Positions 5,861 through 36,764 of a DNA stretch of 64,000 nt are shown here, piece after piece. Below the pieces are notes generated by a model. That model was not told the DNA's origin. It ran no database searches and saw nothing but the letters and a program-made list of their open reading frames with translations. The stretch spans positions 47,802,001 to 47,866,000 of the forward strand of contig OX638154.1 in the NCBI GenBank assembly GCA_951804945.1, read 5' to 3'. Every line of letters begins with the position of its first letter. The stretch's first letter is position 1. A program made the position numbers and the translations under genes. The DNA comes from Podarcis cretensis (Eukaryota).

Positions 5861-5991
5861 CTACTTTCCTGCTTTCATGTATGAAGGTATTGCTCCTCGA
5901 GCTGTCAGGCCTTCAAATCGCTTGTAGGTATAATTTATAAAGACCCAGTCTTTGTTCTTGTAGTCTGTCTCTGGATGGTTGCTTGTGGTCA
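5861..5991 (-). CDS. STK38: STK38 last coding exon, stop TAG at 5863-5861
   Basis: TTSNHPETDYKNKDWVFINYTYKRFEGLTARGAIPSYMKAGK* (hydrophobic motif FINYTY); the 13 exons sum to 1398 nt = 465 aa. Confidence 0.97.
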
Positions 5992-6736: not shown

Positions 6737-6889
<153 letters not shown>

Positions 6890-6899
6890 TTAGAGTTTA

Positions 6900-7244
<345 letters not shown>

Positions 7245-7752
7245 CTAGAGCAGGTCTCCATATATTGGAAGAAAAAAACCTTAGTATCTGTGTGGGGTTA
7301 ATGAGCATTGTTTTTAAAGCCATTTCACATTATTTCCCCGTCCTCCAAAACACTGGGAGCAGTGCAATAGCTGCATTACTCTGATTTTCCTCCAGGCATC
7401 TGGTCATAAGGTACCATGTTCCCCTTCCTAAGCCCTCTGTGCATTACTGAGAAGTTGTGAGGCTCCAGAACATTTTTATGCCATATTAATCAATTCTGTG
7501 TCTCTTCCAGTGAGATATGGACTGCTTAATACCACTTGTTATGATACATGTTTCCCCAATGTTTCATTATCTGGCAATGTAATAAATTGCAAGAATGTCA
7601 ATGCTTTGTTCCTTTTTTTCCTGTTCTGTTTAACATGCTTCTGCTTCCAGGCATATCAAGCAGAATACTCTCTTTTGAATTTCTGTGCAACACAAGAGTT
7701 CAGACACTCACTTAATATTTTCCAGTGCACAGAACATTAGGAGCTAGGGAAA

Positions 7753-7878
7753 AGGTACCCCTGCCCGTACGGGCCAGTCTTGACAGACTCTGGGGTTGTG
7801 CGCCCATCTCACTTAAGAGGCCAGGGGCCAGCGCTGTCCGGAGACACTTCCGGGTCACGTGGCCAGCGTGACATCGCT
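7753..7878 (-). mobile_element. 5'-truncated young Sauria SINE
   Basis: Matches the 3' part of the full-length copies; flanked by direct repeat GAGCTAGGGAAA (7741-7752 and 7879-7890). Confidence 0.9.
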
Positions 7879-8373
7879 GAGCTAGGGAAAGGTTGCCTCT
7901 AAAACTCGGATTCAAGGAAGTTTAGAATCTGCACAAGTCTCTCTCGCTCTACCCTGATTTTTGCTGGAGGTTCAACATAAGGGAGAATGACCATCCTCTT
8001 CTGCAACATACACAATACATTAAGGGAATAAATTTCTCGCTTTATGCAGCTGGCCAAGGAAGCTGGAGGCAGCACAGGAGAGGTTCCCACATTCCTGAAA
8101 ACCCACCATGAAGTAGCAATGGTGCTGTGGATGCTGAGGGGTTCCTTGCAGGTACCTAGGCTAAAGCATTTGCCCAAGTTATGTGCTCTCTGGGGCAGGC
8201 AACTGTTGCAAGTGCTTACAAAAAGGAATAAAGTTAAGAAGCAGTATGAAATAAGGAGAGAGCAGGGATGAAATAAGGAGAGAGCCTAAGCAAAACTAAT
8301 ACTCCTGAATGATAGTGTGCTACCTACACAATTTTTAAAATATGGAAGCCTAACTCTTATTTTTGTAAGATCA

Positions 8374-8604
<231 letters not shown>

Positions 8605-8742
8605 TTAATGAAGTCCATGTGCAGCTATCATCTTCTACCTTCTTAAATTTATTTTAAGGTCAAGCACCACAATTGTATATAAAAATCCAGCTAAAAGTAG
8701 CCAAGCAGAAGAAAAGCAGTATTATATATAACATATTATTTA

Positions 8743-9129
<387 letters not shown>

Positions 9130-9151
9130 TTATTATTTGAGCGATCTAAAC

Positions 9152-9766
9152 CAAGGATGGGGAACCTCTAGCCCATAGCTGTCAACGTCTCCCTTTTTTA
9201 AAGGGAAAGTTCCTTATTCCGAATAGGATTCCTTGCAAGAAAAGGGAAAAGTTGACAGCTATGCTCTCGCCTGCAGGCCAAATGTGTTTCTCCCCCCACC
9301 CAGGTCTCCCCATTTGGCCTGCCAGGCTGTTTTGGGAAAGTCAAAATTATATAAAATGTCAGCTGTGAGGCGAGTAAGGGTGGGCCTTCAAAGGAGCTTA
9401 AAGTGAGCTCTCAATTGTTCCTTTTTATGACGCAAGGAGTGCTCCCAACCAAATGCATCTTGCTCAAGTTGGAGGAAGCAGTGCTACTCTTTGCAAGCCT
9501 CCCCATACTCCCCCTTTGAACCCCTGACATCTGGAGTATAAAACAGTCATGTGGCTTTTAAGCCTCCCTTAAAAAACCCTCCAACATCACTTGGGAACTC
9601 TGAACAAGTAATTTTGACAGGAGGGAGACACAACTTGCCTATCAATCGTGTGCCATAGTGATGACATGTGACTGACAGTTGGGCGATCCCACCTGCCAAA
9701 TTTGGCCTGCAAAATAAATCCTGATAAAGATCAGGCTTGTGGAGCCAAAACGTTTCTCTACCCCTG
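9152..9766. mobile_element. hAT-type MITE with a nested 90-bp MITE at 9174-9263
   Basis: Outer 8-bp TSD ATCTAAAC/ATCTAAGC; inner 13-bp TIR CATAGCTGTCAAC with TSD CTCTAGCC/CTCTCGCC. Confidence 0.75.
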
Positions 9767-9943
9767 ATCTAAGCCTTCAATTACAACTCTATGGTTCTAT
9801 TTCCCTAGATGAGAACAAGTGGCAGAGACGAAACAAGTATGCATTACATACTGATTTCTCTGCAGGATCTTCAAGGTCTTAAACACAAACTATGACATGA
9901 TCTCTACACAGAGGGAAGAATCTCTAGACAGAGCAATACCTAC

Positions 9944-10005
9944 CAGCTGCCGCCTGTTTCTTTTCCAAGTTTCTGCTTTCCTTTTGGAGTTCATATTCTG
10001 AAAAG
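9944..10005 (-). CDS. STK38: STK38 coding exon 8
   Basis: FQNMNSKRKAETWKRNRRQL (NDR autoinhibitory insert); 62 nt. Confidence 0.95.
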
Positions 10006-10719
10006 CTAAAGATAGAAAACAGGTAGTATTACCTTTGTGTTTAATGGCTCTTGTTTCAATGAAGTGTTGATGAAGCTTACATTTTTGTACAATAGTTCCC
10101 TACTTTTAACATATTCCCCTGAATCCCAGTATGCTCCCTCTCCCCACCCAATACAACCCAGAAATGTGCATGTGTGCATGAGAGGGTGAGTATGTGAAAG
10201 AGAACTAGAATAGCCCAGTAAAAATAAATAAAAGTTATATGTGACTGACAGCAAGATGAAAGTTCAGCATTCATTTGATTACATTTCCAAAAATGGCTCC
10301 ATATTTATTAAAGTGGATGTGTATTATTCCTTCTAGTTACAGACAATTTATTCTTTGGTGGCTACACTTAAAATCTTCAGTAGGTATCTATCTTGCTTTG
10401 CAATTTTGCAAAAGCAGTATTTTGAGGTCTCCCTCAGATATCATTTAGCAGCAGTCATTCCATCAAGCTGCAGCAGAGGGATGAGCCTACAGAGTCACTT
10501 CATCAAGTCCGTTGAGATTGCCAGTGACATTTGGCTCCCCCCTCAACTGTTTATATTCAAGCTGGTCATTATAAGAACTCTGTGTAATTTTAAGAACTGA
10601 TTATCAAACTTGCTTGTTTTCTTCTCCCCTCCTCGTCCCATTTATCATTTTGATTCCTGTCTTTAAGACTGCAAGCCTATCAATATTTCTGCCAGGCAAC
10701 AAGCTCAAAAGAAGTTTTA

Positions 10720-10839
<120 letters not shown>

Positions 10840-11654
10840 CTACATGTCAAGAAACAAGCACAAAGTAAGGAGATACAACTCATCCTCATTTTTAAATTTT
10901 CTTTATTTAACAAATTTTATATAACATTTTATTGTATCAAAACCTCTAAAGAGTTCAGGTACTGAATATTTGACCATGGTCTTAAAAGCCTGAACTGGCC
11001 TTGATCTTAAGACCAGGTTTCTAGAACGATAAAATGACTCTGTCTGACCAACTCATTCAGAGTCTTGGGTAATTGTGGCCAAGAGACCTTGGTGATACAT
11101 ACTGTGCATGAATGGAACCATTCACTTAAGAAATTTTGAGAACATGTACAGGAAGCAGGAGAACAACAACAAAAACTGACAACCAAAATTACATGTCATG
11201 ACTCTTCTTCAGCACCCAAAGCATGAATGCCAGGAATCCTAACTAGAACTCCATAATTTCTTTCTCTAGTCTGGGTGGTGGTATGGGAAACACATGCTAT
11301 TGAGGGTTTCGGATTTGATGTAGGTACCTTCTTCTGGCTCATGCATGACATACCACACATTACTGTGGCAACAAGGTCTCTGAGCAGGTCCTTTTTATGC
11401 ATCTAAGCCATTTCCATCCCTGGGGTTTCCAAAGTAAATTAACACAGCAGTAATAAAATAATATTAGATCTCTGCCTTGTGTGTTTATTTATATTGTTTT
11501 CACACCTATGTTTATTACAGAATCATAAAATTGCAGAGTTGGAAGAGAACCAAAGGATCATCTAGTTCAACCCCATTTTTAATTGTATGATTGGAAATCG
11601 CCATGTGATATCTGAAAAAGGGGATTAATAAATTAATAATAATAAATATTTTTA

Positions 11655-11999
<345 letters not shown>

Positions 12000-12584
12000 T
12001 TAAATAGCTACTTAGTCTATTTTCTTTCCTACACAGGCAAGAAAATAGCATCATAGACAGAATTACATTATGTCCTGGAAAATCTGCATGATTTACTCCT
12101 TGCAATTGCTGGTAAAGGATTCTGAAATGGCCAAAAGTAGATGTCCATTCCATCATAAATATAGCAGCCTAAAATAGCAGAATGGCCTTTTGAATATGCC
12201 CTCAATTTCACCGTTTCCTTCTAACAAGTTCATGTTTCTAATTTCAGCATAAATAAATACAATTTTATCAAATTCCTGCATGAGCCAACCTCAACTTATT
12301 TCTGTCAATAACAAGTACAAATGCAAGTCTTGATATAGCTCTGAAAAGTTATTGAGCAGTAAAGTGGATAGGTCATTTGGTCAAAACAGTAATATTCTCC
12401 CTCAAAAACTCACACGAACACCCTGACCAATAAACAGTAACGAGTAAAGGTCAACCTGGAGTAGGACTCCTTCACTATCAGTGAATTTCATATGCTCAAA
12501 ACTGCCTTTCCTATAGTTTGACTATAGTCTATGGGTACATCACTTTAGATTGTGAATTGTTCAATACATGGTAATCAGTGACTA

Positions 12585-12818
<234 letters not shown>

Positions 12819-13059
12819 TCATTTTTTTTAAAAAAGAAGCAAGTTGTAATTAAAGAAATATTTACACAATATTTGCAAATGTTGTTCATAACCCAAGAGG
12901 TCCCCAAACGTAACTAATATTAAAAATAAGTTGCCATTTCAAATTGCAGAATGGTGCATGCCAGAAGCACAGGTGCTGCCCAGTCAAGTGAGTCAAGGTA
13001 CAGGCAATGGGCTGTATACCCACCCCAACTGTGAACAGGAAATAAAATTTTAAAATGAG

Positions 13060-13530
13060 CAATTCCCTCCCCTTACCAGCAGCAGCCACTTAGTTAAGTT
13101 GGGGCTGCCCTTGGAAAATATTCAGAACTTTCAGTTAATGCAGGATGCTGCTGCTAAAGATTTGACCATCACTACATTTCAGAAACATGTTACCCCTTTG
13201 CTATTCTCAGCTGCACTGGTGGTTGGTCTGTTTCTGAATGTAATTCTAGGTTAAAGCCCACAATAACTTAGGACAAGTTGTCTAAAAGCACTTTTTCTTC
13301 CCATTGAGTCTCTCTGCCCTCCGATATCTAGCAAAGCCCTTTTATGCATTCTGTTGCCTTAAGAAGTGCGTTACCACCCACTATACAAGACTGCTTTTTG
13401 TGTCATGGCACCCGGTATATTAACTCCCTGCCCAGAAAGATTAGGTTTATATCCTGTTCTGCTGGTTTCCTGTTGTTTGAAAACCTTTCTAGCAAGCCCT
13501 TGTTTTTAAGCTTCTGTGTTTTTTGGCGTT
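13060..13530 (+). mobile_element. Degenerate LINE (L2-like) 3' fragment
   Basis: GGGCTGCCCTTGGAAA..TTCAG..ATGCAG..GCTGC and CAGCTGCACTGG motifs typical of squamate L2; boundaries approximate. Confidence 0.5.
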
Positions 13531-13593
13531 TGTTGCTGCTATTTTACTGATACTGGCATTGGCCTGGTTTGTAAATTACAGTATGTCAAATTA

Positions 13594-13935
13594 TGGCTAA
13601 GTGTGAATGAGGGAGTGTGTGAGTATTGAGAGGAAAGATCATGACCCCTTTGCTCCTCTCCTGGTCCTGCTGCTGTGCTATTCAGAGCTAAGCCATAGTT
13701 TGGCTTAGGGCTATGTCCAAACCCAGGCCCACAGTTTCCAGACAAATGAGCTGCAGGCCATGTTTGTTCTTGGCTTACCACTTGTGGTTTGTGGAGTGAG
13801 ACAAACCCTGAGCAATGCTAATTCAAATTATGAATTGGCTCTGGGTAGTGTGGCAGCAGCAGGACAAGGGAAGAGCAGAGCGGCTACGATTTTTCATCCA
13901 AGTTCCCACCTACTTTCTTGTTCATGCTTAGCCAT
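13594..13935. mobile_element. Palindromic MITE-like element
   Basis: Long imperfect inverted arms (CCTGCTGCTG...CAGAGC and GCTCTG...GCAGCAGCAGG). Confidence 0.55.
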
Positions 13936-14758
13936 GGATTGACTTAGCAATGCCTTTTGAAATGAGTCATTGGTTTTTATATTTTATAAACTGTCTTTGT
14001 ATCTCTATTTTAGAAGGAGAAAATGATTATAAATCCCAAAATTATTAAATATTGCTAGTGTGAAAACACTGTATCCACCAGCGCGAGCAAAGGGTTTCTT
14101 AATTTGCAGCTGAAGCCTCTAAATAGTTAAGTGCCTTCTGACTACCTCCATGTTGCCTGCATCAAAATTAAATCAGGCATGGGATACAGACAAAAGTGCA
14201 CTTAGTCACCGAGACACATGCAAGTGGAATTTAAGTCAAAGGCTTAAACAGTTAAGGGAAGAATTCTGAATTTCATTTTCCTTCTATAGCAGCATATTTA
14301 TACCTGAACACGCATGAAAATTGATCAGGACACATGTATTCAACTTTTGATGCTCAAAACTCTTAAGACAAGACTTACAGCATGATCCCATGAAGGCTTT
14401 CTATGAACAAGTCCCAGTAAGACTTACTCTTTAATAACTGTGCATACAACTGTAGTTTTTGCATATTAAATACTAAATGCTCAATTAAATTTAGATAAAG
14501 ATGGAGAGTTGGAGATACAGGTTCAGAAACATCTCATCCACAAGCTGGAAAAACTTAAAATGAAAGTTACCACATTCCATTTGGTGAGTACAGAGTTTCT
14601 TTTTCCTAGAAGGTTCTCTTCTGCCTTCCATGCATTCCATATTTCCCCACAAAATGATAATTTAAGATATCCCATCATGAGTCTAATGGTTCCAGCAGAA
14701 AAGAAGAACTCCACATTGCCTGCACGTTCTTACTTTTGACATCTGCATTCTCTCGTTA

Positions 14759-14857
<99 letters not shown>

Positions 14858-15641
14858 CTAGAAGTTGTGCAAAAACAATGCACATATTAAAACCCATTTC
14901 AGCCATTTCTTTTAAGGCAAACAGTTACAGAAAGAAGACTTAGAGGAGCAAAGTATATAGAGCCTTCTGTACCTACCAGTGTAGTATAGCTAGTTTTCAG
15001 CTGCTATGGAGCATAACACTATCTGGCATTGAGTCAATTATTATTTTTCCTTTCTGGCTAACATTCAGTTCTACCCTTCATAATAAATTAGAGTAAGAGA
15101 TACGGGAATACATATAACTGAGACAGGCCTAGGGTACACCCAAAATATTTGGATAATGGGTATAAATAAAGCAGAATATTATTACTATAGCACTACAATG
15201 GAACAGGGCAACTTAGAAAAGGTGTAGACATAGTATATTAAGAGAGTTAAGTTTGGAAAACAACATTATACCGTTAGCCATTAGACGATTTTCAGAAAAG
15301 CCAGTAAGATACTGCTGCTGCTTAGAGCATTACCTGAATTCTGTAAATAACTACATGTAGGAAACAGGTGTTACCAGATAACTGTTAGGGAGCTCAGCAT
15401 AAAACTACACTTCATTTGGTGTTCAATGTTAACAAATCAACTTTGCCCAATTGTCCATTACCTTAAGAGGATTTTCAAATTACTAACATATTTTTCAGAA
15501 GTGTAGAAATTACCTTTATTGATGGGATACTTGCCCTGAAAGCAAACTCTGTGTATTTGCATTTAACAACAGGGTGATAAGATGAACCCACAGCTGTTTG
15601 ATGGTGTTGGAGGGTCAGAAGTTGGCTGTCTATACTTTTTA

Positions 15642-15791
<150 letters not shown>

Positions 15792-16071
15792 CTAGAAGTT
15801 GTTAAAAAATGGGGGGGGGGGATTAGTGTCATTTTCTATTAAAGAATAAATAAATCAACAGCTAGACCAGAATCATTCACAGCAAAGGCTTGTTATCTTT
15901 ACTCTGGTCTTTGATACCTAAAATGTATATTCTTAGGACCCGCCCTTCTTTTTGTGGCTGCATTCCATAACTGTATGTTTTAAAACTATTTTTAATGTTG
16001 TATTTTAAATTGTTGTGATCCATCCTGTGACCTTAGTGTAGAGGACAGATAATAACTTTAAATTATTGATG

Positions 16072-16083
16072 ATGGTGATGATG

Positions 16084-16119
<36 letters not shown>
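16072..16119. repeat. (ATG)n/(ATA)n microsatellite
   Basis: Direct reading. Confidence 0.9.
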
Positions 16120-16120
<1 letters not shown>

Positions 16121-16172
16121 AGGGGTGATGAGAAACAAGCACCAAGAAAGCATGTTTCAGCATATGCAATAC

Positions 16173-16224
16173 CTCTTCATCTTTTAAGCCTTCTTCTTCC
16201 ATAACTTTTTCTAGCTTCTTCTGT
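16173..16224 (-). CDS. STK38: STK38 coding exon 2
   Basis: QKKLEKVMEEEGLKDEE; 52 nt, AG/GT bounded, phase consistent. Confidence 0.96.
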
Positions 16225-17024
16225 CTGGGAAAATAAAAGAATAAAGTTTTTGAACAAGGTCTCCACAAGTTCATGCATACAACTTCAGCACAGAATAGAG
16301 CTGCCAGGAATTGGAACACTGAATTCCAAGGCTTCATTTCTCAATGCACACAACAATCAAGATAATCACCCTGCTTCTGCTTGAACTTCTGCAAAATGAA
16401 CAGGAAATTTGCTCTTATCGTGCATTTGCATCATACAAATTAAGTCTTTTGTAAAGAAAAGGGGCACGAAACAAGAGCAGAGTTTAATCATTTATAATAA
16501 AAAGGACGTACAAACAAACTGATTGCAGGATGAGCAACTTCTGGAAGGTATCAAGACCTGATTTAGATCAACCATCAAATATCTTACTGCCAGGTCAAGG
16601 TGTGTCTGTGGTGGGAAAGGGCTCACAGGAGATAGCTGGCAAAAACAGAGGCCACATCATCGCAGCCAATCTAATACCCAATCCATAATGCACAGCACAA
16701 CTGCATTTGTCACTGGGTGGAACAGTAGAATGTAAAAAGTGGAAAGGACTTCATTTCAAAATGACCTTTGAAACACTATAGAGAGCTTCTTAGACTATAA
16801 ACTACTTCCATTTCTATGAAAATGATCAGTCTCTTCAATTCTAACCAATCTGTCAGCTTAATAAACCTTTAGTTATTCTGTATATGCAAACAAAAAGCTG
16901 GATAAATTTAGGGAGGATATAGAAGGGAGTAGATCTGATGCATTTTAGTAAGGCCTTTCAAGAAAATTGCTCAAAGGCAATGTATTTCAAAAAAACTGAA
17001 ACACCTTACGATAGAATTCTGAGG

Positions 17025-17336
17025 CAAGGGTTCCTGTGAGCTTCATTCAGGTGGTCTTCAGAATGTCCACATTAAATTATTGATTTTAAACTGTATTGCT
17101 GCTTATTTTATTATATTTTACTGTATTATAATTTGAATTCCATAAAATGCAAATTGTAATACAAAAAATACAATATAAGAAATAAAAAAAACAATAAAAA
17201 TACAGCATCTACCACAGCACATTACCAATTATACAACAAACAGGAGTGAAACATGAAGCACCCCCCCCCTCAAGATCATCAGCAAACCTGAAGTAGTCCC
17301 CCAATATCATCTGGGTTGGGGGAAAAGGAACCACTG
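17025..17336. mobile_element. hAT-type MITE, related copy near 49023-49210
   Basis: TSD TTCTGAGG/TTCTAGGG; shares CCTGTGAGCTTCATTCAGGTGGTC with the 49040 copy. Confidence 0.55.
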
Positions 17337-18289
17337 TTCTAGGGTACCAGTCAAGCACACACAATCAAATGTACCTCACAGTTAGAACCATAGAATTGTA
17401 GAGTTGGAAGGGATCCCAAGGGTCATCTAGTATAACCCACTGCAATGCAGGAATGTTATTCCATGTGAACTGGCAGCATAACCTAACAAAGATTTCATAT
17501 GGCTGTATGTTATAGTAAAAGACTGGAAGCAGTGACAAGCTATTTCTATAACTGATCTTCTCATTGTTTAGCCTAATAAGCTTTCAACTACAACATCTAG
17601 AGAGACGTTGGTGGAGTTTCCCCACCAAGCGAAGGGAAACCAGAGAGGTGTGTTTTTCAGCAGTGGCTTCGCCTTCAAGGACCTATGTTCCAATTGGCAT
17701 TCAACAGAATGAAGAGAGGGGTGTTTGTTAAATATTTCAAATAAGGGAAAGCTAAATTGGAACAATGGTTTTATGCATTAAACATTTTTTTACGGAGCAC
17801 ATTTGACCACTACTTGTAGCAGGAAGTAGTTAATATATTTTACAGATAAATATAAAATACAATACTTAGAAGGGAATGAAATCCAGGAAGGAGTAAACTG
17901 TGTTTAGAGAGGCTGCTTTTGATTATAGTACACAGTAGAGCCAAGTGCATTTCGCAATAAAAACTGTTTATACTGGACACACTGAAATAAAAATAAAACA
18001 TAACACTAGAGAGAGAAAAACAACTTTCATTCCAGGAAAATGCTGCTACTAGTTTTCATCAAGCATCTGCAACATATGCCTTTCTTGAAATGCACAACAA
18101 GAGGATAGCATGGGCACTGAAAAATATCATCATACTAAAATATTTTAACGGCTTTTTGAGGACTTAAAAGTGTTATAAAAACTTTTAGCAGGATAAGATG
18201 ATCAGCGTATTTGTGGCATCCATTGTTTCTTAAATCTTGATATAAGGAAAATAGCATTACTTCCATTTTCATGAAGCTGGGATATTTAC

Positions 18290-18420
18290 CTCATTTCTCG
18301 TTCCTCATGCTGCGCAATCAGATTACTGTAGAAGTTTTCTAATGTCACCTTTGTCATTGTAACTCGCTCCTTGGTGTGGTTGCTCATAGATGAACAAGGT
18401 GCTGGGCCAGTCATCGCCAT
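18290..18420 (-). CDS. STK38: STK38 (NDR1 kinase) coding exon 1, start codon at 18420
   Basis: MAMTGPAPCSSMSNHTKERVTMTKVTLENFYSNLIAQHEEREMR; acceptor ccag|GAACC at 18425, donor AG|gtaaat; 131 coding nt. Confidence 0.97.
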
Positions 18421-19689
18421 GGTTCCTGGAAGAGAGAAATTAGAAAATATCTGTGATCCTAAACCTTGAAGCAAGAAATCTACACTACATGATGGCTTAA
18501 ATTTAAATAAAGCAGCCAGTTTAAAAATAAACAAAAGCTTTGCAAAACGCAATATGCCCAAACTGGAAGCTACAAGTGTAAAAGGCCACAATGTTGCAAA
18601 ACTTCCTGTTTTTCTACATAAGTTATGAACAAGGAGGAAAGAAATGTGATAACTATTAAGTCTCTGAATGACATTTGCAGGTTGCATTACAAATGTCTCT
18701 TATTACTTTCATCTCCAGTCAATTAAAATTCTACCAACATGTTTTAAACCAATAATAGTACGTATTTCCATGTAAAAGTATTTACAAACATAGCACAAGC
18801 TTCATTTATTTCCTTGGAACTTGCTTGTATTGAGTAAGAGTCAATATCTGCAGGGCTGTCAACAAAGAGTGAGCAAATTTGTTTCTGTTGCTCTAGAGCC
18901 TAGGGAAAGGGAATATTGATTACACTTTGGAAAGAATGTCCTGACCATATGAACTGCTAGACAGTGGAACAGGCTGCCACACAAGGTAAAGAACTGTTGG
19001 AGGTTTCTAAGGACAAGATGGATGGCCACCTAGTTATTGTAGATAACTAGAGTAGCAGATAATATACCTAAGTAAAGTGGACTAGATGGTTTTTAAACCT
19101 TCCAACTAAGATTCTAATCAGTAATTTTCAGTTCAAATTTACTTGGAGATAAGTCCCAGTGATTTCAATGGAGCTTACCTCCAAGCAAGTGTTCATAGAC
19201 TACAGCCCAAGCAGTATTTTTCCTTGTATGACAGCAGAAACAAAGGTTTCTGTTCCTATTTTCTTCACAGTGTAACTAGCCGACCTAGAACCAATTAGCT
19301 CTTACACATTTGCTTTAGTTAACAATTGTAACTGCTTTTAAAATCTTCCCAATTTCATCAGAACTTCTAACCAAACAAAGGTTATATAAAATAATTATTT
19401 GAACTAATTAGAGTATTTTGCTCGCATGGCTCTTTGAATGCAATCATTTTACGGTGCACTCCCTTCCAAGAAAAGCTGTACATAATATAAATTATCTCTC
19501 TTTGTCATACTAGGCAACTGCAGCTCCTTTTTGCCAGTTGAAATTTCCCATTTAAAAATTATCATCATCCCCAAGGACCAGAGTGTCACTATGGCCCATC
19601 TGCAGTGTACCTAGCCTCTCATGCCAGTTACAGGATCATGCCACATGATACAGCCATGGCGTCCCACAAAGTTTGTTATGGGTACCTAG

Positions 19690-20030
19690 GGCTGTTAGGC
19701 AGACCCCCGTTTCTCTTAAGGAGCTACAGTTTTCAGGATCTCTGGGAATTGTAGCTCTGTGCAGGGAATAGGGGTATCCTAACAACTCTTACCATGCTTA
19801 ACAAACCACAATTGCCAGGATGCTTTTGGGGGGAAACCACAGATGTTTTAAAGTGGCATGGTACAGCTTTAAATGTACAGCACAGGTGGGGCCTACTAGA
19901 ATTCAAAGCAAAGCCTTCCCCTATGCATCCAAAGCACATTTCCCCCCAAAGAATCCTGGCAACTGCAACTTACCCCTCCCAAAGCTGCAAATTCCCAGCA
20001 CCCTTAACAAAATATAGTTCCCAGAGCTTT
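19690..20030. mobile_element. Palindromic DNA-transposon-derived repeat
   Basis: GGGAATTGTAGCTCTG motif with an inverted copy (CAAATTCCCAG); boundaries approximate. Confidence 0.5.
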
Positions 20031-20299
20031 GGAGGCGGGAAGGGGCAAGAATTGTGCTTTTTACATGTAGGGCTTATACAATGTCTTAGAATCCCAGGAG
20101 ACTTAAGCTGCTCCACTCCTAGGCACATTTACTCGGGAGCAATTCCCTCTCCTCAAGTCAGCAAAAGCCTCACTCGCCAGCAAAAACGACAAGGAGAAGA
20201 TGAAGAAGGAAAAAGGAGCACGAGGTCCATTTTCCACAGAAGAAGTTTGCGAGGGGGAAGAGGCGAGCAGGTGTAAACAGAGGAAGGAAAGGCAGAGCC

Positions 20300-21300
20300 A
20301 GGCGTCACGCTAAAAACCTAACAGGAATCTATGTGGTCAAGAAGCAGAAAATGGGGGGTTTTTTTAGAGGGGGGAGGCAGGAGACTCAAGAGGAGGAAGA
20401 AGAGGAGGAGGAGGAGGAGGACGGGGCAACTTGAGGCGTCTCCCCTCCCCTCTGTGGATGCTACAAAAGTACCTACCTGGCAAGAGGGGGCGGGACAGGA
20501 TGGCGCCCCGGGAGGCAGCTCAGCCTGAGGGGGGAGGAATAACTTTTGGGTGGGGGGGTTAAGAGCAAACACCGGAGGAAGAGACGCTTACCGGACCCCC
20601 TTCTGGGAGCAGCGCCGAGGAGCCCCCGCCGTCCAATGCCTTCCCAGCCGACCAACACGGGAGAGAGACGGGGAGAAGCAGTTCCCAGAGGCCGAGCCCC
20701 GCCCCTTGCTCCCCGCTCAGCCGCCCCCACCCCAAAGGAAAGCTGGAGCCCGCGACCGGACAAGCGCCGACTGGAAACTCTGGCACAGCCCGCATGCGCA
20801 GAAGAGCTCTTTCTCTCTCTCCCGGCCGCGGCGCCGCCCTCTTCAAGGGGCGAGGCTCGCCTGATGGCCCGCTCCCCGCCCGCAGCCCCAGGAGGCGGGG
20901 CGCCGACGCACTTTTGCCTAGCCTCCGGCGCTGCGCATGCGCCGGCTGCCGCTCTAGCGCCTCGGCGAGCGGGCTGGGAAGTTCGTGCTGCTGTGCGCCG
21001 CTCCTTCGGCGTATGAGGAAGTCGGCAACTGTTTCCCGGGCGGCGCAAGGTGGCGGCCTCCTCCTCCGCCTCGCCCTCCGCTTGCTTACGCGGAAGTAAA
21101 CGCGGCACGACGGGCGTTTGCTCCCCACGTTAGGGGAGGTGAAGGGGAGGGTTGCGGGGTTTTAGCGGCTTTGCTGGGAAGTATGTTGGCTTCCGCGCTT
21201 AGGATCGCACTGCGCGGGTGTTTTGGACGGTCACCATCGAGCCTGGGTTTACGCACGTTTATTCAGAAGAAAAAAATCTCTGTTTTTAGGACACTCCGCC
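20300..21300 (-). promoter_or_regulatory. STK38: STK38 CpG-island promoter and non-coding first exon(s)
   Basis: Dense CpG; NRF1 sites CGCATGCGCA 20791-20800 and TGCGCATGCGC 20932-20942; ETS CGGAAGT 21091-21097; candidate minus-strand donors CCG|gtaagc (exon end 20592), CAG|gtaggt (20477) and CGC|gtaagc (21090). Confidence 0.85.
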
Positions 21301-24695: not shown

Positions 24696-24701
24696 TTTAT
24701 T
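24696..24701 (-). terminator. Candidate PTH4 polyadenylation signal
   Basis: First minus-strand AATAAA I found, about 460 nt downstream of the stop codon. Confidence 0.45.
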
Positions 24702-25157
24702 ATAACTTAAACCCACATTGCTAAAGGGGAACAGTAGAAAACAGGCACAAAAGACCTCAAGTAATTATATGGGTGGTGGAAGCAGGAAAGGAGCATAAGG
24801 GACAAAGTGTGAATACTTTCCACATACCCCAGCAGAATCTGCATGCACAAATACCTCAATAATATTGTTCAACAAATGCAAAGGAGTGAAGCAGCAATAA
24901 TAATATATAGCCCCTGGCAATATTGCTAACAGTTATAAAATATTTGTCTAGAAGGGAAAATTTTAACCCCTGCACATTCCTGTTTAATAATCGGAATAAG
25001 GGGGAAATGTTCTGACCTTTCAACAATGCCAGATTACAATACTACAAAGGAGTAGTAAATGGCACAAACACACATTTTCTTTGTTAATCAACTTTTCTTT
25101 TGATCTCCCTCAGTGTATCAAGTAGCAGATGGACTGCAATAGGTTCGGTCAGGAAAT

Positions 25158-25548
25158 CTATGTCTGGGTGCTGAGATTTCTTTTGCCATCTTGATCTCCA
25201 CCTTGAAATATGTCAGAAAGATCTTGCCGGTCCTGATTGCCCTTTACATTCTTTAGATACTGCAACACATTTGTTTTCCTGAGGACAGCAACAGGCTCTT
25301 CCTTCTCCATCAATCCCATCAGCAGTTGCTTCATCATTTCTAGAGACTCTTCTCTGCCAGTTCCATCAGAGAGATCGGAGAGGTCTTGGTTCTTTGGGGA
25401 GGTCCACACAATGTGTGCCTGCGGGATGTCCCTGCCCACGGCTGTGTGCACTCCTCCCATGACTTGGTGGAGCCAAATCAGTCGGTTTAACTCTTCACGG
25501 AGATTTCCTTTGTTATGCAAGAACTGGAATTCTGCCACTCCTCTCTTA
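25158..25548 (-). CDS. PTH4: PTH-family hormone (PTH4/PTH-L) mature-peptide exon
   Basis: catttcag|T AAG AGA gives T-KR-GVAEFQFLHNKGNLREELNRLIWLHQVMGGVHTA-VGR...GKRNLSTQT*; PTH/PTHrP 1-34 pattern (V2, E4, Q6, H9, G12, R20, W23, L24, HTA 32-34); 89+391 = 480 nt = 159 aa. Confidence 0.9.
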
Positions 25549-26076
25549 CTGAAATGTGAAAAAGCCAGTACTGTGCTTGAGAAGCAGAAACACATTCACA
25601 ACAAAGCAAGAAAACATTTCAAGTATATTAGTTAAAGATGAGGAAACCAAGATCACTAAGGGATTGTCTCCAACCTTGTTGAACTATCTGGTGCCATCTA
25701 ACTGCTTGCAAAAATAGTGTATGGTATTCCTGGGGTCTGAACCAGTGCTGACCACTTCAGATGTTTGACATCTGCATTCATTATTTTCTTTGTAGAATTG
25801 GACCGATGCAAAGTTGACAGTCCCCCAAGCCATGCAAGTCATTGTCCCACAGCTCCTCATCTGCCTTTATTTGTAATTCTTTAAGGCTGGAATCCTACAA
25901 AGACTACCTCAGAATAAGTTCCACTGAACTCAGTAGGGCTTACTTCTAAGTAGGCATATATAGGATTGGACTGTAAGGCTACAGTTCTATGCATGCTTGT
26001 TTTGGAATATGTTCCACTGAATTCAATGGAATCTGATTTTTTCATGTCTGAATTTGCACTGGTGTTTCTTATTTGC

Positions 26077-26437
26077 TGGGACGCAGGTGGCGCTGTGGGT
26101 TAAAGCCTCAGCGCCTAGGGCTTGCCGATCGAAAGGTCGGCGGTTCGAATCCCTGCGGCGGGGTGCGCTCCCGCTGCTCGGTACCAGCGCCTGCCAACCT
26201 AGCAGTTCGAAAGCACCTCCGGGTGCAAGTAGATAAATAGGGACCGCTTACCAGCGGGAAGGTAAACGGCGTTTCCGTGTGCGGCTCTGGCTTGCCAGAG
26301 CAGCGATGTCACGCTGGCCACGTGACCCGGAAGTGTCTCCGGACAGCGCTGGCCCCTGGCCTCTTAAGTGAGATGGGCGCACAACCCCAGAGTCTGTCAA
26401 GACTGGCCCGTACGGGCAGGGGTACCTTTACCTTTAC
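26077..26437 (+). mobile_element. Full-length young Sauria SINE in the PTH4 intron
   Basis: Near-identical to the 23541 copy; 12-bp TSD TTTCTTATTTGC. Confidence 0.95.
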
Positions 26438-27105
26438 TTTCTTATTTGCCTACCTCTTGCTAAGAAATCTTTTCATGGCTACTGTCTAGCAAATATTATA
26501 TGAGTTTTCAGTGTTGGACTTTGAGTTTTGTTTCAAACTGGGAAACCTAAAATTCAGTAAAGATTAGCCACTGACAGATGCACAACTAACTTTAACCTAA
26601 TATATGAAAAGACAGATTACTGTACAAGCATATTAGCATTGTCGCTGTTCACATGGCTGTTTCAGGTTCTTGCATTATAGTTTCTATCCAGTGACTTTTT
26701 TGTAGTGTAAAATGAAGGTGGCATAGCTAGCTTTTATTTACAAAACCTGTCTGTTCATTATAGTACCATGGACCAAAGAGAGCCCACTGAGGGCCATACT
26801 TGGGGAAAACTCCTATCCAGTTGTGGACAGCATGAATGGGGATAGTGCCTGACCTCCCAACATCTGTGTTTGAGGGGTAGAGTGGCATAGAGGTCAGTGC
26901 AGTGCAAACACACCACCAAATGCATCGGATTGGCTCTGCCAATGCATTTGAACCATGCCGACCTCCCCACTGCCTCACCTCTCTCCTGCCTGAAACCTTG
27001 GAGAGTGGTTAGGGCTTCGCTGGACGGACCAATGGTCTGATTCATTATAAATATGTTCCTGTGTCCTATGTTAGACATGATGATGGCAGTCACATTTCTT
27101 TATTA

Positions 27106-27322
27106 CAGTGGTACCTCAGGTTACAGACGCTTCAGGTTACAGATGCTCCAGGTTACAGCCTCCACTAACCCAGAAGTAGTACTTCAGGTTAAGAACTTTA
27201 CCTCAGGATGAGAACAGAAATTGCATGCTGATGGCAGCGGGAGGTCCCATTAGCTAAAGTGGTACTTCAGGTTAAGAACGGACCTGTGGAACGAATTAAA
27301 TTCATAACCAGAGGTACCTCTG
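27106..27322. mobile_element. Tc1/mariner (Tigger-like) MITE
   Basis: TIR CAGTGGTACCTC, TA target duplication. Confidence 0.85.
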
Positions 27323-28262
27323 TATTTGTGTGTGTGCTCCATCTTTGTAATAAAGTGGTGGTGTACTCCCTGCTCCATAAACTGGGTTAGGAGAAAAGGG
27401 ACTGGACTGACGGAGTGCAGGGGGTAAAAAAAGGGGGTCATATTTCCTGATCCATGCACCCATTTTCATGTCAAGACTACCACATACCTTGGCCTGTTTC
27501 AGACATAATAGGAAACCATGATTCCATAATGGGAAACTCCATAATGGGAAGCTCCATGAAAGAGCCTGTATGAGTCTCAAGTTTCTATGCATCTCTCTCC
27601 CATGGCCACAAGGATATTGGAAGCTTCCATTTTTAAACAAGCCGCAGTTCCTCTTTATGCCCAGGCTGGAGAGATTGTAGCAAGAGGTACTAACCTTATG
27701 ACCAGCAGACCATGTGAGCCTGAGGTTCATGTGGGTTCACTCATGTGGTGAGCAACTGGTTTCCCATTATGTCTAAACCAGGCTAATATATGTGAACAGG
27801 ACAGACATGTGAATAACACATGTAGCTGTCTTCATTGTTTCTTATTTTGCTATGGATTTGTGCTTTGACGTGTTAAAAGAGGTAGCTCTCTCACCCTTAT
27901 CATCACTATCTAGGAATGAACAGAAGATCACTTTATGGTTTACGGAACCATCTTGGAAAGTTCTAACAACAAGAAGACTTTGCCCTTTCCCTTAGCTATC
28001 TTGTGACTTTCACTACAGGATAATCTTGTTTTTAAAAGCAGCTTCCAAATGTATCATATTTTAAAGAAAAATCATTTTAAAAATTACAAACGATGCTAAA
28101 CATATGTTTGCACAGTGATCTCCTTCAGAAAAATACATTATATTGTAAAGCATTACTGCAATGTTATCATTTTGCATCCAAAAGTCAACACAGTAAAAAA
28201 AACAACCCAAAAACCCACCCAAAAGAAAGCTTATCAAAAATTTAACTAAAAAATATTCTTAC

Positions 28263-28351
28263 GTTTCTGTTTCTTGACATGTTGCAAACCAAACAAGAAA
28301 AAAAATGGACAAAAATGTTACCATCTGTAGATATCTTTGGGACAAAAGCAT
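28263..28351 (-). CDS. PTH4: PTH-family hormone (PTH4/PTH-L) prepro exon: signal peptide and propeptide
   Basis: tttacag|GACAGAAG ATG; MLLSQRYLQMVTFLSIFFLVWFATCQETE + AC|gtaaga; 89 nt, phase 2; hydrophobic signal core. Confidence 0.88.
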
Positions 28352-30107
28352 CTTCTGTCCTGTAAACTATTAAACAAGATGAAATAAGATGGACATTGAA
28401 ATGCAACTTGCAGCTATAACATATTCCACTTAAATAATGGATAGTAAAATTAAACCATAGTGGCAGATAGGAAGTATTGGCCTGAAATATATATATTTTT
28501 TTAAAATATTATTCTTTGCCTTTTCATATTTACTGTGACAATAAAAGCCAAACAATTCCATGGTGTATTTTATTTGTATATTAGGACACAAAAGGTTTTA
28601 ATTTGAAACAGTAGGAAACCATCTTTTAAATATGTATTCCAAATATTCCTGTCATAATTATATTACTGCAATCTTCACTCAGGTTAGTATAGCCTATGAA
28701 AATCAATAGCATAATATGTATATAAAATTGTTTGCTTTTGGAGGGAACAAAACAAATATTCTGATCTGAACCAGAACTGGTTTTTTAGAAATATGTGAAT
28801 ACACAAAATACATCCTGAATGGCACAAGCCATTGGTTCAATTTTTCCAGTACTGTAATCACTTATTGACAGATTTTGTCAATAATATATTTGAGATATAT
28901 TTGTATAGCTACATATAATCGACAATATCTTAATTAAATATTAGTTGAAAGAAAATATTTAACAGTGCAACCCTATACATGTCTACTCAGAAATAAGTTC
29001 AATGGGGCTTATATCCAGATAAGTGTATATAGAATTTAAAGCCCAACAGGTTAAAAATAGCAGTGTAATGTAGAGTACTTACTATTTCTCCTTGTACTGG
29101 AGTATGGTAAAGTTGATTTGTGGAGTCTTACTTGTTGCTAGCAGATCTCTAGTGAGCCTCCTTCTGCAATGACAGTGTGCGCCTTCCTAGCTTCTTTTAT
29201 AGTTCTGTAGCTGCACTTAACAATAGGGATGAACTGCGCATCATATTCTATGACTAAGATCTTTTTCTCCTTGTATAAATGAAAGATGTGCTTCTCCCAG
29301 AGACAATCACCCTTGGACAATAAAGTTTACTATTTGGCTAGTGATTAAGACACTGGGACCTCCTGTTTTTGAAATATCTCTCATCCTGTCATTTTCATAG
29401 GATCGTAAAATCATGCTATGGAGGTTGGGATCAATAGCAAGGCTGAAGAATTGGAGACTTTTTATCACTGGGGGACTTATTCCAGCCATTACTTGCTGGA
29501 TAACTTTTGATATAATTTCTGGATCAGCGCCACATGTTTAAGGTAAGAATCAGCTTGATTTTTCTAGAAGGCAGCTGGAGAAGTGGAGAACTGACCATAT
29601 GAACAAGGCAAGGAGGAATCTTCCTCTTCTTGACATGTTATTGTTATATTTTGAATTGGACCAGGATTTACAATGGTGCATGGTCACAATGTGCCTTCAG
29701 TGCCAGGGCTCAGCCCACTTCATGGGATATTACTATATGCAACTAAAAATGTAGAAGCATAAATAAAACTTCTTGCTCAGTAGAAATTAAAGACATACTT
29801 CACACAGCCCACCCCAAATTTTGGGTTGATGTTTATCAGTCTTGGTTGAACTATGGCAGCCTCAATGGCAAACAAATATTCAGGATGCTCCCAGTGAATT
29901 CTCCTGCATCCACCCAGTGTCACCAACAGTAACTTGCAAACTGACCCATAATATCTCTCTGGCGTAACTGGATGGGGCTTTGCTATTATACATGCAATAC
30001 TTTCCTCAGATGCTGCATAAGCAGATTTCACTGCCCATCCACAGATGAGAAATGTGTGCATATGGGGCATAGCTAGAGTCAGAAGATGCAGGACTGTGAG
30101 GGCTCAC

Positions 30108-30172
30108 CTAAATATGGTACTTTCCCAGCGGTCCTATCTCGGCAGGCCTGCTCTTCTTTGAGCTTTTATATA
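30108..30172 (-). promoter_or_regulatory. PTH4: Candidate PTH4 TATA box and short non-coding exon 1
   Basis: TATATAAAA on minus strand 30172-30164; predicted TSS about 30142; donor TTAG|gtgagc at 30108/30107; PTH genes have a non-coding first exon. Confidence 0.55.
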
Positions 30173-30302
30173 AGGCAGCAACCTGCTACTCTGAACATCA
30201 GAACTGATCTTACATATGTGCCTCTCAGCCTTGCACAGAAAAAGAATTCTGCTGCCTTCATCTATTATTTAGTTTTCCTCCTTTATAGTTGTTTGTCTAG
30301 TG

Positions 30303-35851: not shown

Positions 35852-36057
35852 ATGCATCGTGATTCGTGTCCACTGGACTGCAAGGTTTATGTAGGTAACC
35901 TTGGGAACAATGGCAACAAAACTGAATTGGAGCGAGCCTTTGGCTACTATGGACCACTACGTAGTGTGTGGGTTGCTAGGAATCCCCCTGGTTTTGCTTT
36001 CGTTGAATTTGAAGACCCACGTGATGCTGCTGATGCAGTCAGAGAACTAGATGGGAG
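35852..36057 (+). CDS. SRSF3: SRSF3 (SRp20) coding exon 1, RRM
   Basis: [68 protein letters not shown]; 206 nt. Confidence 0.98.
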
Positions 36058-36764
36058 GTAAAAATTCACTTACATTTGGGTTGAGCTTGTATGTATACTC
36101 TGATATATTAATGTAATATACTGCTTTGATTGAAAAGAAAGTTGGTCACAAATAGCCTGGCTTATGTACTTGGAGATCCAAAAGAAATAGAACTGATTTT
36201 CTGTGGGGGCTAGTTGGGTTGGGAAGTAATTCTTACTAACAGTCTGTTAAATTTGTGTGAAATGTAATCCTTTGCTTGTGTTAGAAGAGTTTATTTTGAG
36301 TACAGTTTAAACATGTTGCATATTATTCCTGAGCTTCTAGATTTTGTACAGCTATCAAATTTTGGAAACACTGGTTGTGAGCTCTTGTGGTTCTGAGTGC
36401 CCTGGTTCAAACATTTAATATTTTTTTAAAATGGAAATATGCTCCACGTTGCAGGCTCTTAATGGCTCAGTCTGTAGCTGAATTTCACTCATGTTGACTT
36501 AAAAACATTTTTATTTTGACATCTATAATAAGCCTGAAGCTGAATATGCGTTCTATATGATCAAAACAAAGTGCTGACTGCTTCTTAGGAGTGAAATACT
36601 GGTCCCCAGTCTAATTTTCAGTTAAACAAAACAAAATTAGACTGACTTGGTATGGTTTTGTGTTGAAGTTTAAACAACTAGGGAAATACAGGGGCACTAG
36701 TTGAAGTGTCTGGCTTAGTTTTATTAGGCTGTTAGAACTAACAACCCTTCCCTTTTTCTCTTAG

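What the first reader, a model, noticed from the sequence alone, without database searches (positions are those of the whole stretch)
25158..30172. Intact parathyroid-hormone-family gene (PTH4/PTH-L) hidden between STK38 and SRSF3
Seen in sequence: an 89-nt exon (28351-28263, too short for the ORF track) encodes a signal peptide. It splices in phase 2 to a 391-nt exon (25548-25158), giving an uninterrupted 159-aa precursor: MLLSQRYLQMVTFLSIFFLVWFATCQETET-KR-GVAEFQFLHNKGNLREELNRLIWLHQVMGGVHTA-VGR.... A TATA box with a short non-coding exon lies upstream and an AATAAA downstream. Established knowledge: PTH and PTHLH have a phase-2 intron just before the basic cleavage site and share the 1-34 pattern (V2, E4, Q6, H9, G12, R20, L24; HTA 32-34 in PTHrP). 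PTH4/PTH-L is the paralogue reported in fish and chicken and lost in eutherians; in zebrafish it acts as a brain-to-bone signal, and as I recall it maps near SRSF3/CDKN1A. Human has no such gene in this interval. Inference: this lizard retains a functional PTH4 endocrine or neuroendocrine axis that annotation could easily miss.
Basis: partly seen in the sequence, partly recalled or inferred. Interest (0 to 1): 0.92.

Follow-up and report, generated by a model that had tools for sequence, protein, structure and literature searches.

The report
Lizard PTH4 hormone gene, peptide rewritten
This is an intact lizard copy of PTH4, a parathyroid-hormone relative lost in placental mammals, in its expected place beside SRSF3; the gene is already known and annotated in other lizards and birds, but in this lizard family the hormone part has changed unusually much.

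Summary
On the minus strand, an 89-nt coding exon (28351-28263) joins in phase 2 to a 391-nt exon (25548-25158). Together they encode a signal peptide, a KR cleavage site and a PTH-type peptide. Exon B alone passes Pfam's Parathyroid model (38.2 bits, cutoff 22).

A tree places it in the squamate "parathyroid hormone 4-like" clade, within PTH4 and apart from PTHrP. It lies between STK38 and SRSF3, and Pinheiro et al. 2010 report the PTH-L/SFRS3 linkage for chicken and Xenopus. So the PTH4 call is right, but it is not new. More than a hundred PTH4 or PTH4-like proteins are already named in squamates, birds, crocodilians, turtles, salamanders and lungfish.

Two things go beyond that. No full-length lacertid model turned up among 5.8 billion proteins, only a mis-built Podarcis fragment. 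The lacertid hormone domain differs from the squamate consensus at 16 of 34 residues, against 18 of 93 in the rest (p=0.003). In every other species this ratio runs the other way. The residues I recall as receptor-contacting (V2, L8, R20, W23, L24) are kept.

Transcription is unproven. The spliced 159-aa protein was never searched as one piece.

The parts
28263..28351 (-). Coding exon A. It encodes the initiator Met, the signal peptide and the start of the pro-segment (MLLSQRYLQMVTFLSIFFLVWFATCQETE plus 2 nt). The exon probably begins at 28359, after the acceptor TTTACAG|G.
   Evidence: It is 69-79% identical to the N-termini of annotated squamate PTH4-like proteins. tblastn maps Anolis and alligator to 28351-28265 and 28354-28262. 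The hydrophobic core spans residues 10-24, with an 11-residue Kyte-Doolittle mean up to 2.66.
25549..28262 (-). Phase-2 intron (GT..AG) just before the Lys-Arg cleavage site. It contains SINE and other repeat copies, including a SINE at 26065-26437.
   Evidence: One search shows GTAAGA at 28262 and TTTCAG ending at 25549. The intron position before KR agrees with the literature on PTH-family genes (PMC4354418). A related species' contig skips the SINE.
25158..25548 (-). Coding part of the last exon: the third base of Thr30, the KR site, the PTH-type peptide, the C-terminal extension and the TAG stop.
   Evidence: Pfam PF01279 gives 38.2 bits against a cutoff of 22. It is 60-73% identical to named squamate PTH4-like proteins.
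25440..25541 (-). Predicted mature hormone residues 1-34 (GVAEFQFLHNKGNLREELNRLIWLHQVMGGVHTA). This is the lacertid-specific diverged region.
   Evidence: It aligns to PTHrP(1-36) and PTH(1-34) chains in the PDB. It has 16/34 differences from the squamate consensus against 18/93 in the rest, Fisher p=0.003. G1, F5, N13 and N19 occur in none of 202 other family members.
25161..25439 (-). C-terminal extension of the precursor. Its motifs KTNVLQYLKNVKG and DQDGKRNLS are well conserved among squamates.
   Evidence: Alignment A1.
30108..30172 (-).
   Evidence: The sequence is present. There is no transcript or conservation evidence.
29132..29254 (-). Alternative candidate promoter and non-coding first exon: a conserved element at 29254-29216, TATAAAAG at 29201-29194 and donor CAA|GTAAGA at 29132|29131.
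   Evidence: One search gives the sequence. The element's translation (EYDAQFIPIV) matches residues 6-18 of the Naja naja model P0013 (tblastn E 0.001 within 7.5 kb). This is candidate status only.
24696..24988 (-). Polyadenylation-signal candidates: ATTAAA starting at 24988 (169 nt after the stop) and AATAAA starting at 24701 (456 nt after the stop).
5864..21100 (-). Flanking gene STK38 (NDR1 kinase). Its exons run from 5864 to 18420, with a G+C-rich promoter region at about 20500-21100.
   Evidence: ORF list. The kinase exon 11694-11843 matches PDB 6bxi 'Serine/threonine-protein kinase 38' at E 1.7e-27. The N-terminal exon matches an STK38-like peptide.
35852..36058 (+). Flanking gene SRSF3, first coding exon (RRM).
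   Evidence: It matches PDB 9asq 'Serine/arginine-rich splicing factor 3' over 69/69 residues at E 2e-45, better than SRSF7 at 6e-29.

Best explanation
This is the lacertid orthologue of PTH4 (also called PTH-L), the fourth vertebrate parathyroid-hormone paralogue. It sits in its ancestral position between STK38 and SRSF3. It has the family's usual layout: a probable non-coding first exon, an exon for the signal peptide and part of the pro-segment, a phase-2 intron just before Lys-Arg, and a last exon for the hormone and a C-terminal extension. The inferred mechanism runs as follows. The precursor enters the secretory pathway. Signal peptidase cuts near Cys25. A prohormone convertase cuts after Lys-Arg and frees a helical peptide of about 34 residues or more. 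By analogy with zebrafish Pth4 and chicken and Xenopus PTH-L, that peptide activates class-B PTH receptors (PTH1R, PTH2R or PTH3R). In lacertids the hormone domain was heavily rewritten. The residues I recall as contacting the receptor were kept, so the peptide most likely still binds a PTH receptor, perhaps with altered selectivity or potency. Shown here: gene structure, family membership, orthology and synteny. Inferred: transcription, processing and receptor action.
For: Intact exons and canonical splice sites. Pfam Parathyroid above its curated cutoff on exon B alone. PTHrP and PTH 1-34 alignments keep V2, E4, Q6, L8, H9, G12, R20, L24 and HTA32-34. The nearest proteins are named 'parathyroid hormone 4-like' in five squamates. 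In the ML tree the squamate PTH4 clade has support 100/99, sauropsid PTH4 93/93, and the PTH4 clade including teleost 'parathyroid hormone 4' 92/92; PTHrP is separate at 95/89. SRSF3 and STK38 flank the gene, and the PTH-L/SFRS3 linkage is published for chicken and Xenopus (PMC3009671). The signal peptide is conserved and has a hydrophobic core. Constraint within lacertids: exon B is open in the window and in a second lacertid (P0001, 96% identical). No indels were listed in exon B in two related species' contigs. Of the 7 listed differences, 3 are replacements and 4 silent, giving pN/pS about 0.21. Lacertid substitutions avoid V2, E4, Q6, L8, G12, L18, R20, L21, W23, L24, H25, M28 and G29-A34. 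Pth4 activates Pth1r, Pth2ra and Pth3r in cell assays, as cited in PMC12439947.
Against: There is no evidence of transcription. No listed run is on record as RNA, and the laid contigs run through the introns without any spliced joint shown. No full-length lacertid gene model exists in the protein collection. The hormone domain is normally the best-conserved part, yet 16/34 residues differ from the squamate consensus and four residues are unique in the family; relaxed constraint could also produce this. The pN/pS estimate rests on 7 differences. The signal-peptide and cleavage predictions were made without a dedicated predictor.
Confidence: 0.8

Rival explanations
1. The gene is a PTH4 orthologue under relaxed constraint in lacertids. 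The hormone domain has drifted, the peptide no longer acts as a PTH-receptor agonist, and the still-open frame is a gene on its way to loss, as happened in eutherian mammals.
For: Substitutions are concentrated in the normally invariant 1-34 region: 16/34 against 18/93, the reverse of all 20 other species compared. G1, F5, N13 and N19 are unseen in 202 family members. There is no RNA evidence. No RefSeq-type lacertid model was found, although other squamates have one. The literature proposes that redundancy with PTH led to loss of PTH4 in eutherians (PMC5640766).
Against: The frame, start codon, KR site, both splice sites and stop are intact. The diverged peptide is nearly fixed between two lacertid genera, with 1 difference in 34. 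The residues I recall as receptor-contacting and the whole 28-34 segment are untouched. Listed differences from a related species give pN/pS about 0.21. The C-terminal extension and the signal peptide remain conserved.
Confidence: 0.15
2. The gene is not PTH4 but a lineage-specific duplicate of PTH or PTHLH, or its hormone exon was overwritten by gene conversion from one of them.
For: The best PDB match is PTHrP(1-36). Asn10 is a PTH-like state (from memory of PTH sequences). Only 2 of 202 other members aligned have N10.
Against: The tree puts it firmly inside squamate PTH4 (100/99) and apart from PTHrP. The C-terminal extension is PTH4-specific and collinear with other squamates. The position next to SRSF3 is the PTH4 position. 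The closest 1-34 peptides outside lacertids are PTH4s at 21/34, and no paralogue in the set comes closer.
Confidence: 0.03

Closest known systems
Squamate 'parathyroid hormone 4-like' gene models (NCBI: Elgaria multicarinata, Varanus komodoensis, Hemicordylus capensis, Ahaetulla prasina, Sceloporus undulatus; UniProt G1KSU8, Anolis carolinensis)
   Same: The precursor layout and length are the same (155-166 aa). The signal peptide is 69-79% identical and exon B 60-73% identical. The KR site, the C-terminal motifs KTNVLQYLKNVKG and GKRNLS, and residues 28-34 (MGGVHTA) are shared.
   Different: Those species share an almost invariant 1-34 (AVTEHQLLNDRGRALQGLKRLMWLHNAMGGVHTA, 1-2 changes each, 10 in Sceloporus). 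The lacertid peptide differs at 16 positions. The Elgaria and Varanus models carry 7 extra residues before KR that the window cannot encode in frame.
Chicken and Xenopus PTH-L (Pinheiro et al. 2010, PMC3009671)
   Same: It is the same paralogue by tree (bird PTH4-like proteins) and by linkage to SFRS3/SRSF3. The paper describes a PTH-like gene structure and a single mature peptide.
   Different: PTH-L transcripts and calciotropic activity were measured in those species. Nothing has been measured for any lizard. On et al. 2015 state that all PTH-L peptides carry an 'MHD' motif at 8-10; the window has LHN.
Zebrafish Pth4 (Suarez-Bregua et al. 2017; PMC5645135; PMC12439947)
   Same: It falls in the same orthology group, since a teleost 'parathyroid hormone 4' lies in the same clade.
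   Different: Teleost precursors are shorter (about 116-125 aa) and lack the sauropsid C-terminal extension. Per the literature, teleost pth-l lacks the KR site and has the intron before an SRR motif (PMC4354418). Carrying the function over to a lizard with a rewritten hormone domain is an extrapolation.
PTHrP (PTHLH) and PTH
   Same: They share the Pfam family PF01279, the 1-34 helical receptor-binding peptide with V2, E4, Q6, H9, G12, R20, L24 and HTA32-34 as in PTHrP, and the intron before the basic cleavage site.
   Different: They form separate clades, lie at different loci (chicken PTH on chr5 and PTHrP on chr1) and have different C-terminal regions.

Membership tests
Parathyroid hormone family (Pfam PF01279) | Match to the family profile above the curated gathering score | tested here: met
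   Exon B alone scores 38.2 bits against a cutoff of 22, E 2.5e-9, covering profile positions 1-45.
Parathyroid hormone family (Pfam PF01279) | Secreted precursor: an N-terminal signal peptide followed by a short pro-segment ending in a dibasic site directly before residue 1 of the hormone | tested here: met
   Exon A has a charged n-region (R6) and a hydrophobic core over residues 10-24, and it is conserved with annotated precursors. KR immediately precedes G1. No dedicated signal-peptide predictor was available.
Parathyroid hormone family (Pfam PF01279) | Conserved 1-34 residues. Those I recall as receptor-contacting in PTH and PTHrP are V2, M/L8, R20, W/F23, L24 and L/I/M28. Family-conserved residues are E4, Q6, H9 and G12. 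| tested here: met
   All are present in the window peptide. Their role in receptor contact comes from my own knowledge of PTH1R-ligand structures and was not tested here.
Parathyroid hormone family (Pfam PF01279) | Intron interrupting the prepro region just before the basic cleavage site | tested here: met
   A phase-2 GT..AG intron lies one codon before KR. The literature statement on intron position is in PMC4354418.
PTH4 / PTH-L orthology group | Groups with named PTH4 proteins to the exclusion of PTH and PTHrP | tested here: met
   ML tree of 42 sequences: squamate PTH4 100/99, sauropsid PTH4 93/93, PTH4 with teleost Engraulis 'parathyroid hormone 4' 92/92, PTHrP clade 95/89. Names come from the sources.
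PTH4 / PTH-L orthology group | Conserved synteny with SRSF3 (SFRS3) | tested here: met
STK38 lies on the other side. The linkage is published for chicken chr26 and Xenopus (PMC3009671).
PTH4 / PTH-L orthology group | Near-invariant PTH4 hormone sequence (AVTEHQ..D.GR..QGLKRLMWL), including the 'MHD'-type motif at 8-10 noted by On et al. 2015 | tested here: not met
   16/34 residues differ from the squamate consensus, and positions 8-10 read LHN. G1, F5, N13 and N19 are unique among 202 members. This conservation pattern is an observed regularity, not a criterion of orthology, so it does not overturn the orthology call.
PTH4 / PTH-L orthology group | Transcribed and spliced as predicted (hypothalamus in fish; cartilage, brain, lung and bone in chicken and Xenopus) | tested here: inconclusive
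   No run on record as RNA holds the locus. Contigs of four runs cover introns and exons alike with no spliced joint listed. One contig ends exactly at the acceptor 25548 and overlaps by 30 nt a contig that continues into the intron.
PTH4 / PTH-L orthology group | Peptide activates PTH receptors (PTH1R, PTH2R or PTH3R) | not testable with these tools
   Only the zebrafish literature is available (PMC12439947).

The most novel reading that the evidence does not exclude
In the lacertid lineage the PTH4 hormone was re-tuned, not degraded. About half of residues 1-27 were replaced, including four residues found in no other PTH-family peptide (G1, F5, N13, N19). The residues I recall as contacting the receptor were held fixed, as were the signal peptide, the cleavage site and the C-terminal extension. 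This would mean a lineage-specific change of receptor selectivity or signalling bias, possibly co-evolving with a PTH receptor, in a hormone otherwise nearly frozen since the coelacanth split.
Probability: 0.3. Interest if true: 0.55.

Novelty: new member of a known kind. Interest (0 to 1): 0.3.

Why it matters
PTH4 is the least studied member of the parathyroid-hormone family. It is absent from placental mammals and has been tested functionally almost only in zebrafish, with roles in bone mineral balance and sleep. Showing that a lacertid has an intact copy in the ancestral position adds little on its own, because many sauropsid copies are already annotated. Two points are useful. First, lacertid annotations appear to lack or mis-build this gene, so it would be missing from comparative endocrine gene sets for that family. 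Second, the lacertid hormone domain is a natural variant that departs at 16 of 34 positions from a sequence conserved for over 400 million years, yet keeps the residues I recall as contacting the receptor. That gives a ready-made probe for which PTH4 positions set receptor selectivity. It also offers a test of whether PTH4 is being lost again through redundancy with PTH, as proposed for eutherians.

Tried and rejected
No joint was listed at 28263/25548, 30108/28359 or 29132/28359. This is inconclusive and is not evidence of silence.

I therefore could not fetch DNA of the Elgaria, Varanus or Podarcis loci. That ruled out a direct synteny check in other squamates, a proper codon-based dN/dS and a conservation test of the two 5' exon candidates.

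3. A squamate-only tree meant to date the burst gave a polytomy. The Logan-derived sequences carry no species names, so the burst cannot be bracketed.

4. Exon against intron divergence relative to a related species (7/294 against 18/516 listed differences) was not significant (p=0.53).

5. Gene conversion from a paralogue was considered. No family member outside lacertids is closer than 21/34, and those closest are PTH4s. Lacertid PTH and PTHLH themselves were not available.

6. The PDB search with the STK38 C-terminal exon found nothing. The N-terminal exon only hit an STK38-like peptide. The kinase exon settled it.

7. A broad literature search for PTH4 in reptiles was swamped. A search on 'pth4' alone listed no paper on reptile PTH4.

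8. The primary paper Suarez-Bregua et al. 2017 (PMC5240660) is not held. Its conclusions are taken from the same group's review.

9. As the operators require, the spliced 159-aa protein was never built or searched as one sequence. The exons were searched separately by reference. The N run at 37629-38176 was left alone.


Full report
WHAT IS THERE

On the minus strand, an ATG at 28351 opens an 89-nt coding stretch that ends ...GAAAC|GTAAGA at 28263|28262. After a 2714-nt intron ending ...CATTTCAG at 25549, the frame resumes at 25548 with T AAG AGA. It stays open for 129 codons to TAG at 25160-25158. The intron is in phase 2 and lies one codon before Lys-Arg.

Each was searched by reference, and the joined step is left out.

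FAMILY

Exon B alone matches Pfam PF01279 (Parathyroid hormone family) at 38.2 bits against a curated cutoff of 22, E 2.5e-9. Against solved structures, the best matches are PTHrP(1-36) and PTH(1-34) peptides. They align residue for residue from position 2 to 34 and share V2, E4, Q6, L8, H9, G12, R20, L24 and HTA32-34.

Exon A is 69-79% identical to the N-termini of annotated squamate precursors. The Anolis and alligator N-termini map by tblastn to 28351-28265 and 28354-28262. It has a typical signal-peptide hydrophobic core over residues 10-24. No dedicated signal-peptide predictor was available.

WHICH PARALOGUE

The closest proteins are named 'parathyroid hormone 4-like' by NCBI in Elgaria, Varanus and Hemicordylus. 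A profile search adds Ahaetulla, Sceloporus, more than a hundred birds ('PTH4 protein' or 'parathyroid hormone 4-like'), alligator, turtles, axolotl and lungfish, plus a coelacanth protein that its source labels 'parathyroid hormone-related protein-like'.

An exhaustive profile search gave 102 family representatives, including PTHrP- and PTH-type proteins. Ten were given names from their sources.

In a maximum-likelihood tree of 42 sequences, the window's exon B sits in these nested groups:
- with a second lacertid sequence, support 100/100;
- inside squamate PTH4, support 100/99;
- inside sauropsid PTH4, support 93/93;
- inside a clade that also holds teleost 'parathyroid hormone 4' and the lungfish, coelacanth and salamander sequences, support 92/92.

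The PTHrP clade is separate, with support 95/89.

SYNTENY

The ORF at 35852-36058 (+) is the first coding exon of SRSF3. It matches PDB 9asq over 69/69 residues at E 2e-45, against 6e-29 for SRSF7. The minus-strand exons between 5864 and 18420 belong to STK38 (PDB 6bxi, E 1.7e-27).

Pinheiro et al. 2010 report that PTH-L and SFRS3 are linked in Xenopus (scaffold_169) and chicken (chromosome 26). They also report that human chromosome 6 carries SFRS3 but lacks PTH-L (PMC3009671). The review PMC5640766 states that PTH4 was lost after the eutherian-metatherian split.

I did not examine human sequence.

HOW NEW IS IT

As a kind of gene it is not new. PTH-L was described in chicken and frog in 2010, and PTH4-like models exist for many squamates.

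Among 5.8 billion clustered proteins, the only lacertid entries were two:
- a Logan ORF that reads through the intron end (P0001, 96% identical);
- a 109-aa Podarcis muralis 'uncharacterized protein' (A0A670IHM8, P0007). It lacks the signal-peptide exon, starts in an intronic repeat and ends in unrelated sequence.

So lacertid annotations appear to miss or mis-build the gene. I could not inspect those annotations directly.

THE UNEXPECTED PART

PTH4(1-34) is nearly frozen. The squamate consensus AVTEHQLLNDRGRALQGLKRLMWLHNAMGGVHTA differs from coelacanth at 9 positions, from axolotl at 5, and from most squamates at 1-2.

The window's peptide, GVAEFQFLHNKGNLREELNRLIWLHQVMGGVHTA, differs at 16 of 34 positions. 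The remaining 93 residues of exon B differ at 18. That is a ratio of 2.4 (Fisher p=0.003). In all 20 other species the hormone domain is the better-conserved part, with ratios of 0.08-0.85.

The overall lacertid stem branch (0.34) is no longer than the snake stem (0.35). Snakes, however, keep the hormone intact. G1, F5, N13 and N19 occur in none of 202 other family members, and N10, L14 and R15 occur in one or two. No paralogue resembles the new sequence, so gene conversion is unlikely on present data.

The positions left untouched are V2, E4, Q6, L8, G12, L18, R20, L21, W23, L24, H25 and 28-34. These include the residues that, from my own knowledge of PTH1R-ligand structures, make the key receptor contacts.

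The diverged peptide is almost identical in the second lacertid, with one V/A difference. Contigs of two related species show no indel in exon B. The seven listed differences to one of them split into 3 replacements and 4 silent changes, pN/pS about 0.21. The numbers are small, so this is only suggestive.

I read this as a burst on the lacertid stem followed by constraint. That fits a re-tuned but working hormone better than decay. Decay is not excluded.

EXPRESSION AND GENE ENDS

No run on record as RNA holds the locus. I laid four small runs of uncertain type from related species on 25000-30400. Their contigs lie on introns as well as exons, and no spliced joint was listed.

One contig in run X9 ends exactly at the acceptor (25548). 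It overlaps by 30 nt another contig that continues into the intron. That is what an assembly-graph branch at a splice site would look like, but it is only a hint.

So does a second set: TATAAAAG at 29201-29194 with donor CAA|GTAAGA at 29132|29131. That second set is preceded by a 39-nt element (29254-29216). The element's translation matches the start of the Naja naja gene model P0013 (tblastn E 0.001 in 7.5 kb). This suggests a promoter-proximal element conserved between snakes and lacertids.

Which first exon is used is open. PolyA signals lie at 24988 (ATTAAA) and 24701 (AATAAA).

MECHANISM

Shown here:
- a secretory precursor gene of the PTH family, orthologous to PTH4, intact;
- the expected gene structure and chromosomal position.

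Inferred:
- signal-peptide cleavage near Cys25;
- convertase cleavage after KR;
- release of a helical peptide that binds class-B PTH receptors.

For the last step, the preprint PMC12439947, citing earlier work, states that zebrafish Pth4 induces signalling in cells expressing pth1r, pth2ra or pth3r. It also reports that Pth4 is made by hypothalamic neurons. Other zebrafish work links Pth4 to mineral balance. Whether the lizard uses it as a neuropeptide, a calciotropic factor or both is unknown.

LIMITS

There was therefore no orthologous DNA, no codon-model test, no synteny check in other squamates and no conservation test of the 5' exons. The primary 2017 PTH4 paper is not held. The N run at 37629-38176 in SRSF3 was left untouched.

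VERDICT

This is a correct and careful observation of a real, intact gene that is correctly named. The gene is already known and widely annotated outside lacertids, so its novelty is modest. The lineage-specific rewriting of the hormone domain is the part worth following up.

Noticed in passing
window 26065-26437 (also 7725-7915, 23710-23954, 57186-57569): A tRNA-derived-looking SINE sits in the PTH4 intron. A 1489-nt contig from a related species (run X1) skips it exactly, so it is a recent insertion in the window's lineage or a deletion in the other. Near-identical copies lie at three other places in the window.
   Followed up: partly
P0149 and cluster members (Aquarana, Rana, Lithobates 'parathyroid hormone'): The frog protein that NCBI names 'parathyroid hormone' falls inside the PTH4 clade on a long branch. 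It may be the anuran PTH-L under a misleading name.
   Followed up: no
P0007 (Podarcis muralis A0A670IHM8); compare window 25881-26045: The only database model of this gene from a lacertid is mis-built. Its N-terminus is a repeat-derived ORF from the intron, the signal-peptide exon is missing and the C-terminus is unrelated sequence.
   Followed up: partly
P0002, P0003 (Elgaria, Varanus); window 25549-25569: These RefSeq models have 7 extra residues (SEFSHFN, TGFSQFS) before KR that equal the translated end of the intron (window AFSHFS). That implies an acceptor 21 nt upstream. In the window that position is preceded by GT, not AG, so only the proximal acceptor keeps the frame.
   Followed up: partly
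window 29216-29254: A 39-nt non-coding element just upstream of a TATAAAAG box is conserved with cobra, where it appears as 'EYDAQFIPIV' at the start of the Naja model P0013. It is a candidate PTH4 promoter element.
   Followed up: partly
window 25161-25439: The C-terminal extension keeps KTNVLQYLKNVKG and a dibasic KR near the end (DGKRNLS) across squamates. KR is also present in birds, turtles and alligator, but the preceding Gly is not in the three birds and the alligator examined, so C-terminal amidation is not conserved across sauropsids. Likewise the 'GR' after HTA is SSR in birds and RAR in turtles.
   Followed up: partly
window 37629-38176: The only N run of the window lies inside SRSF3.
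   Followed up: no
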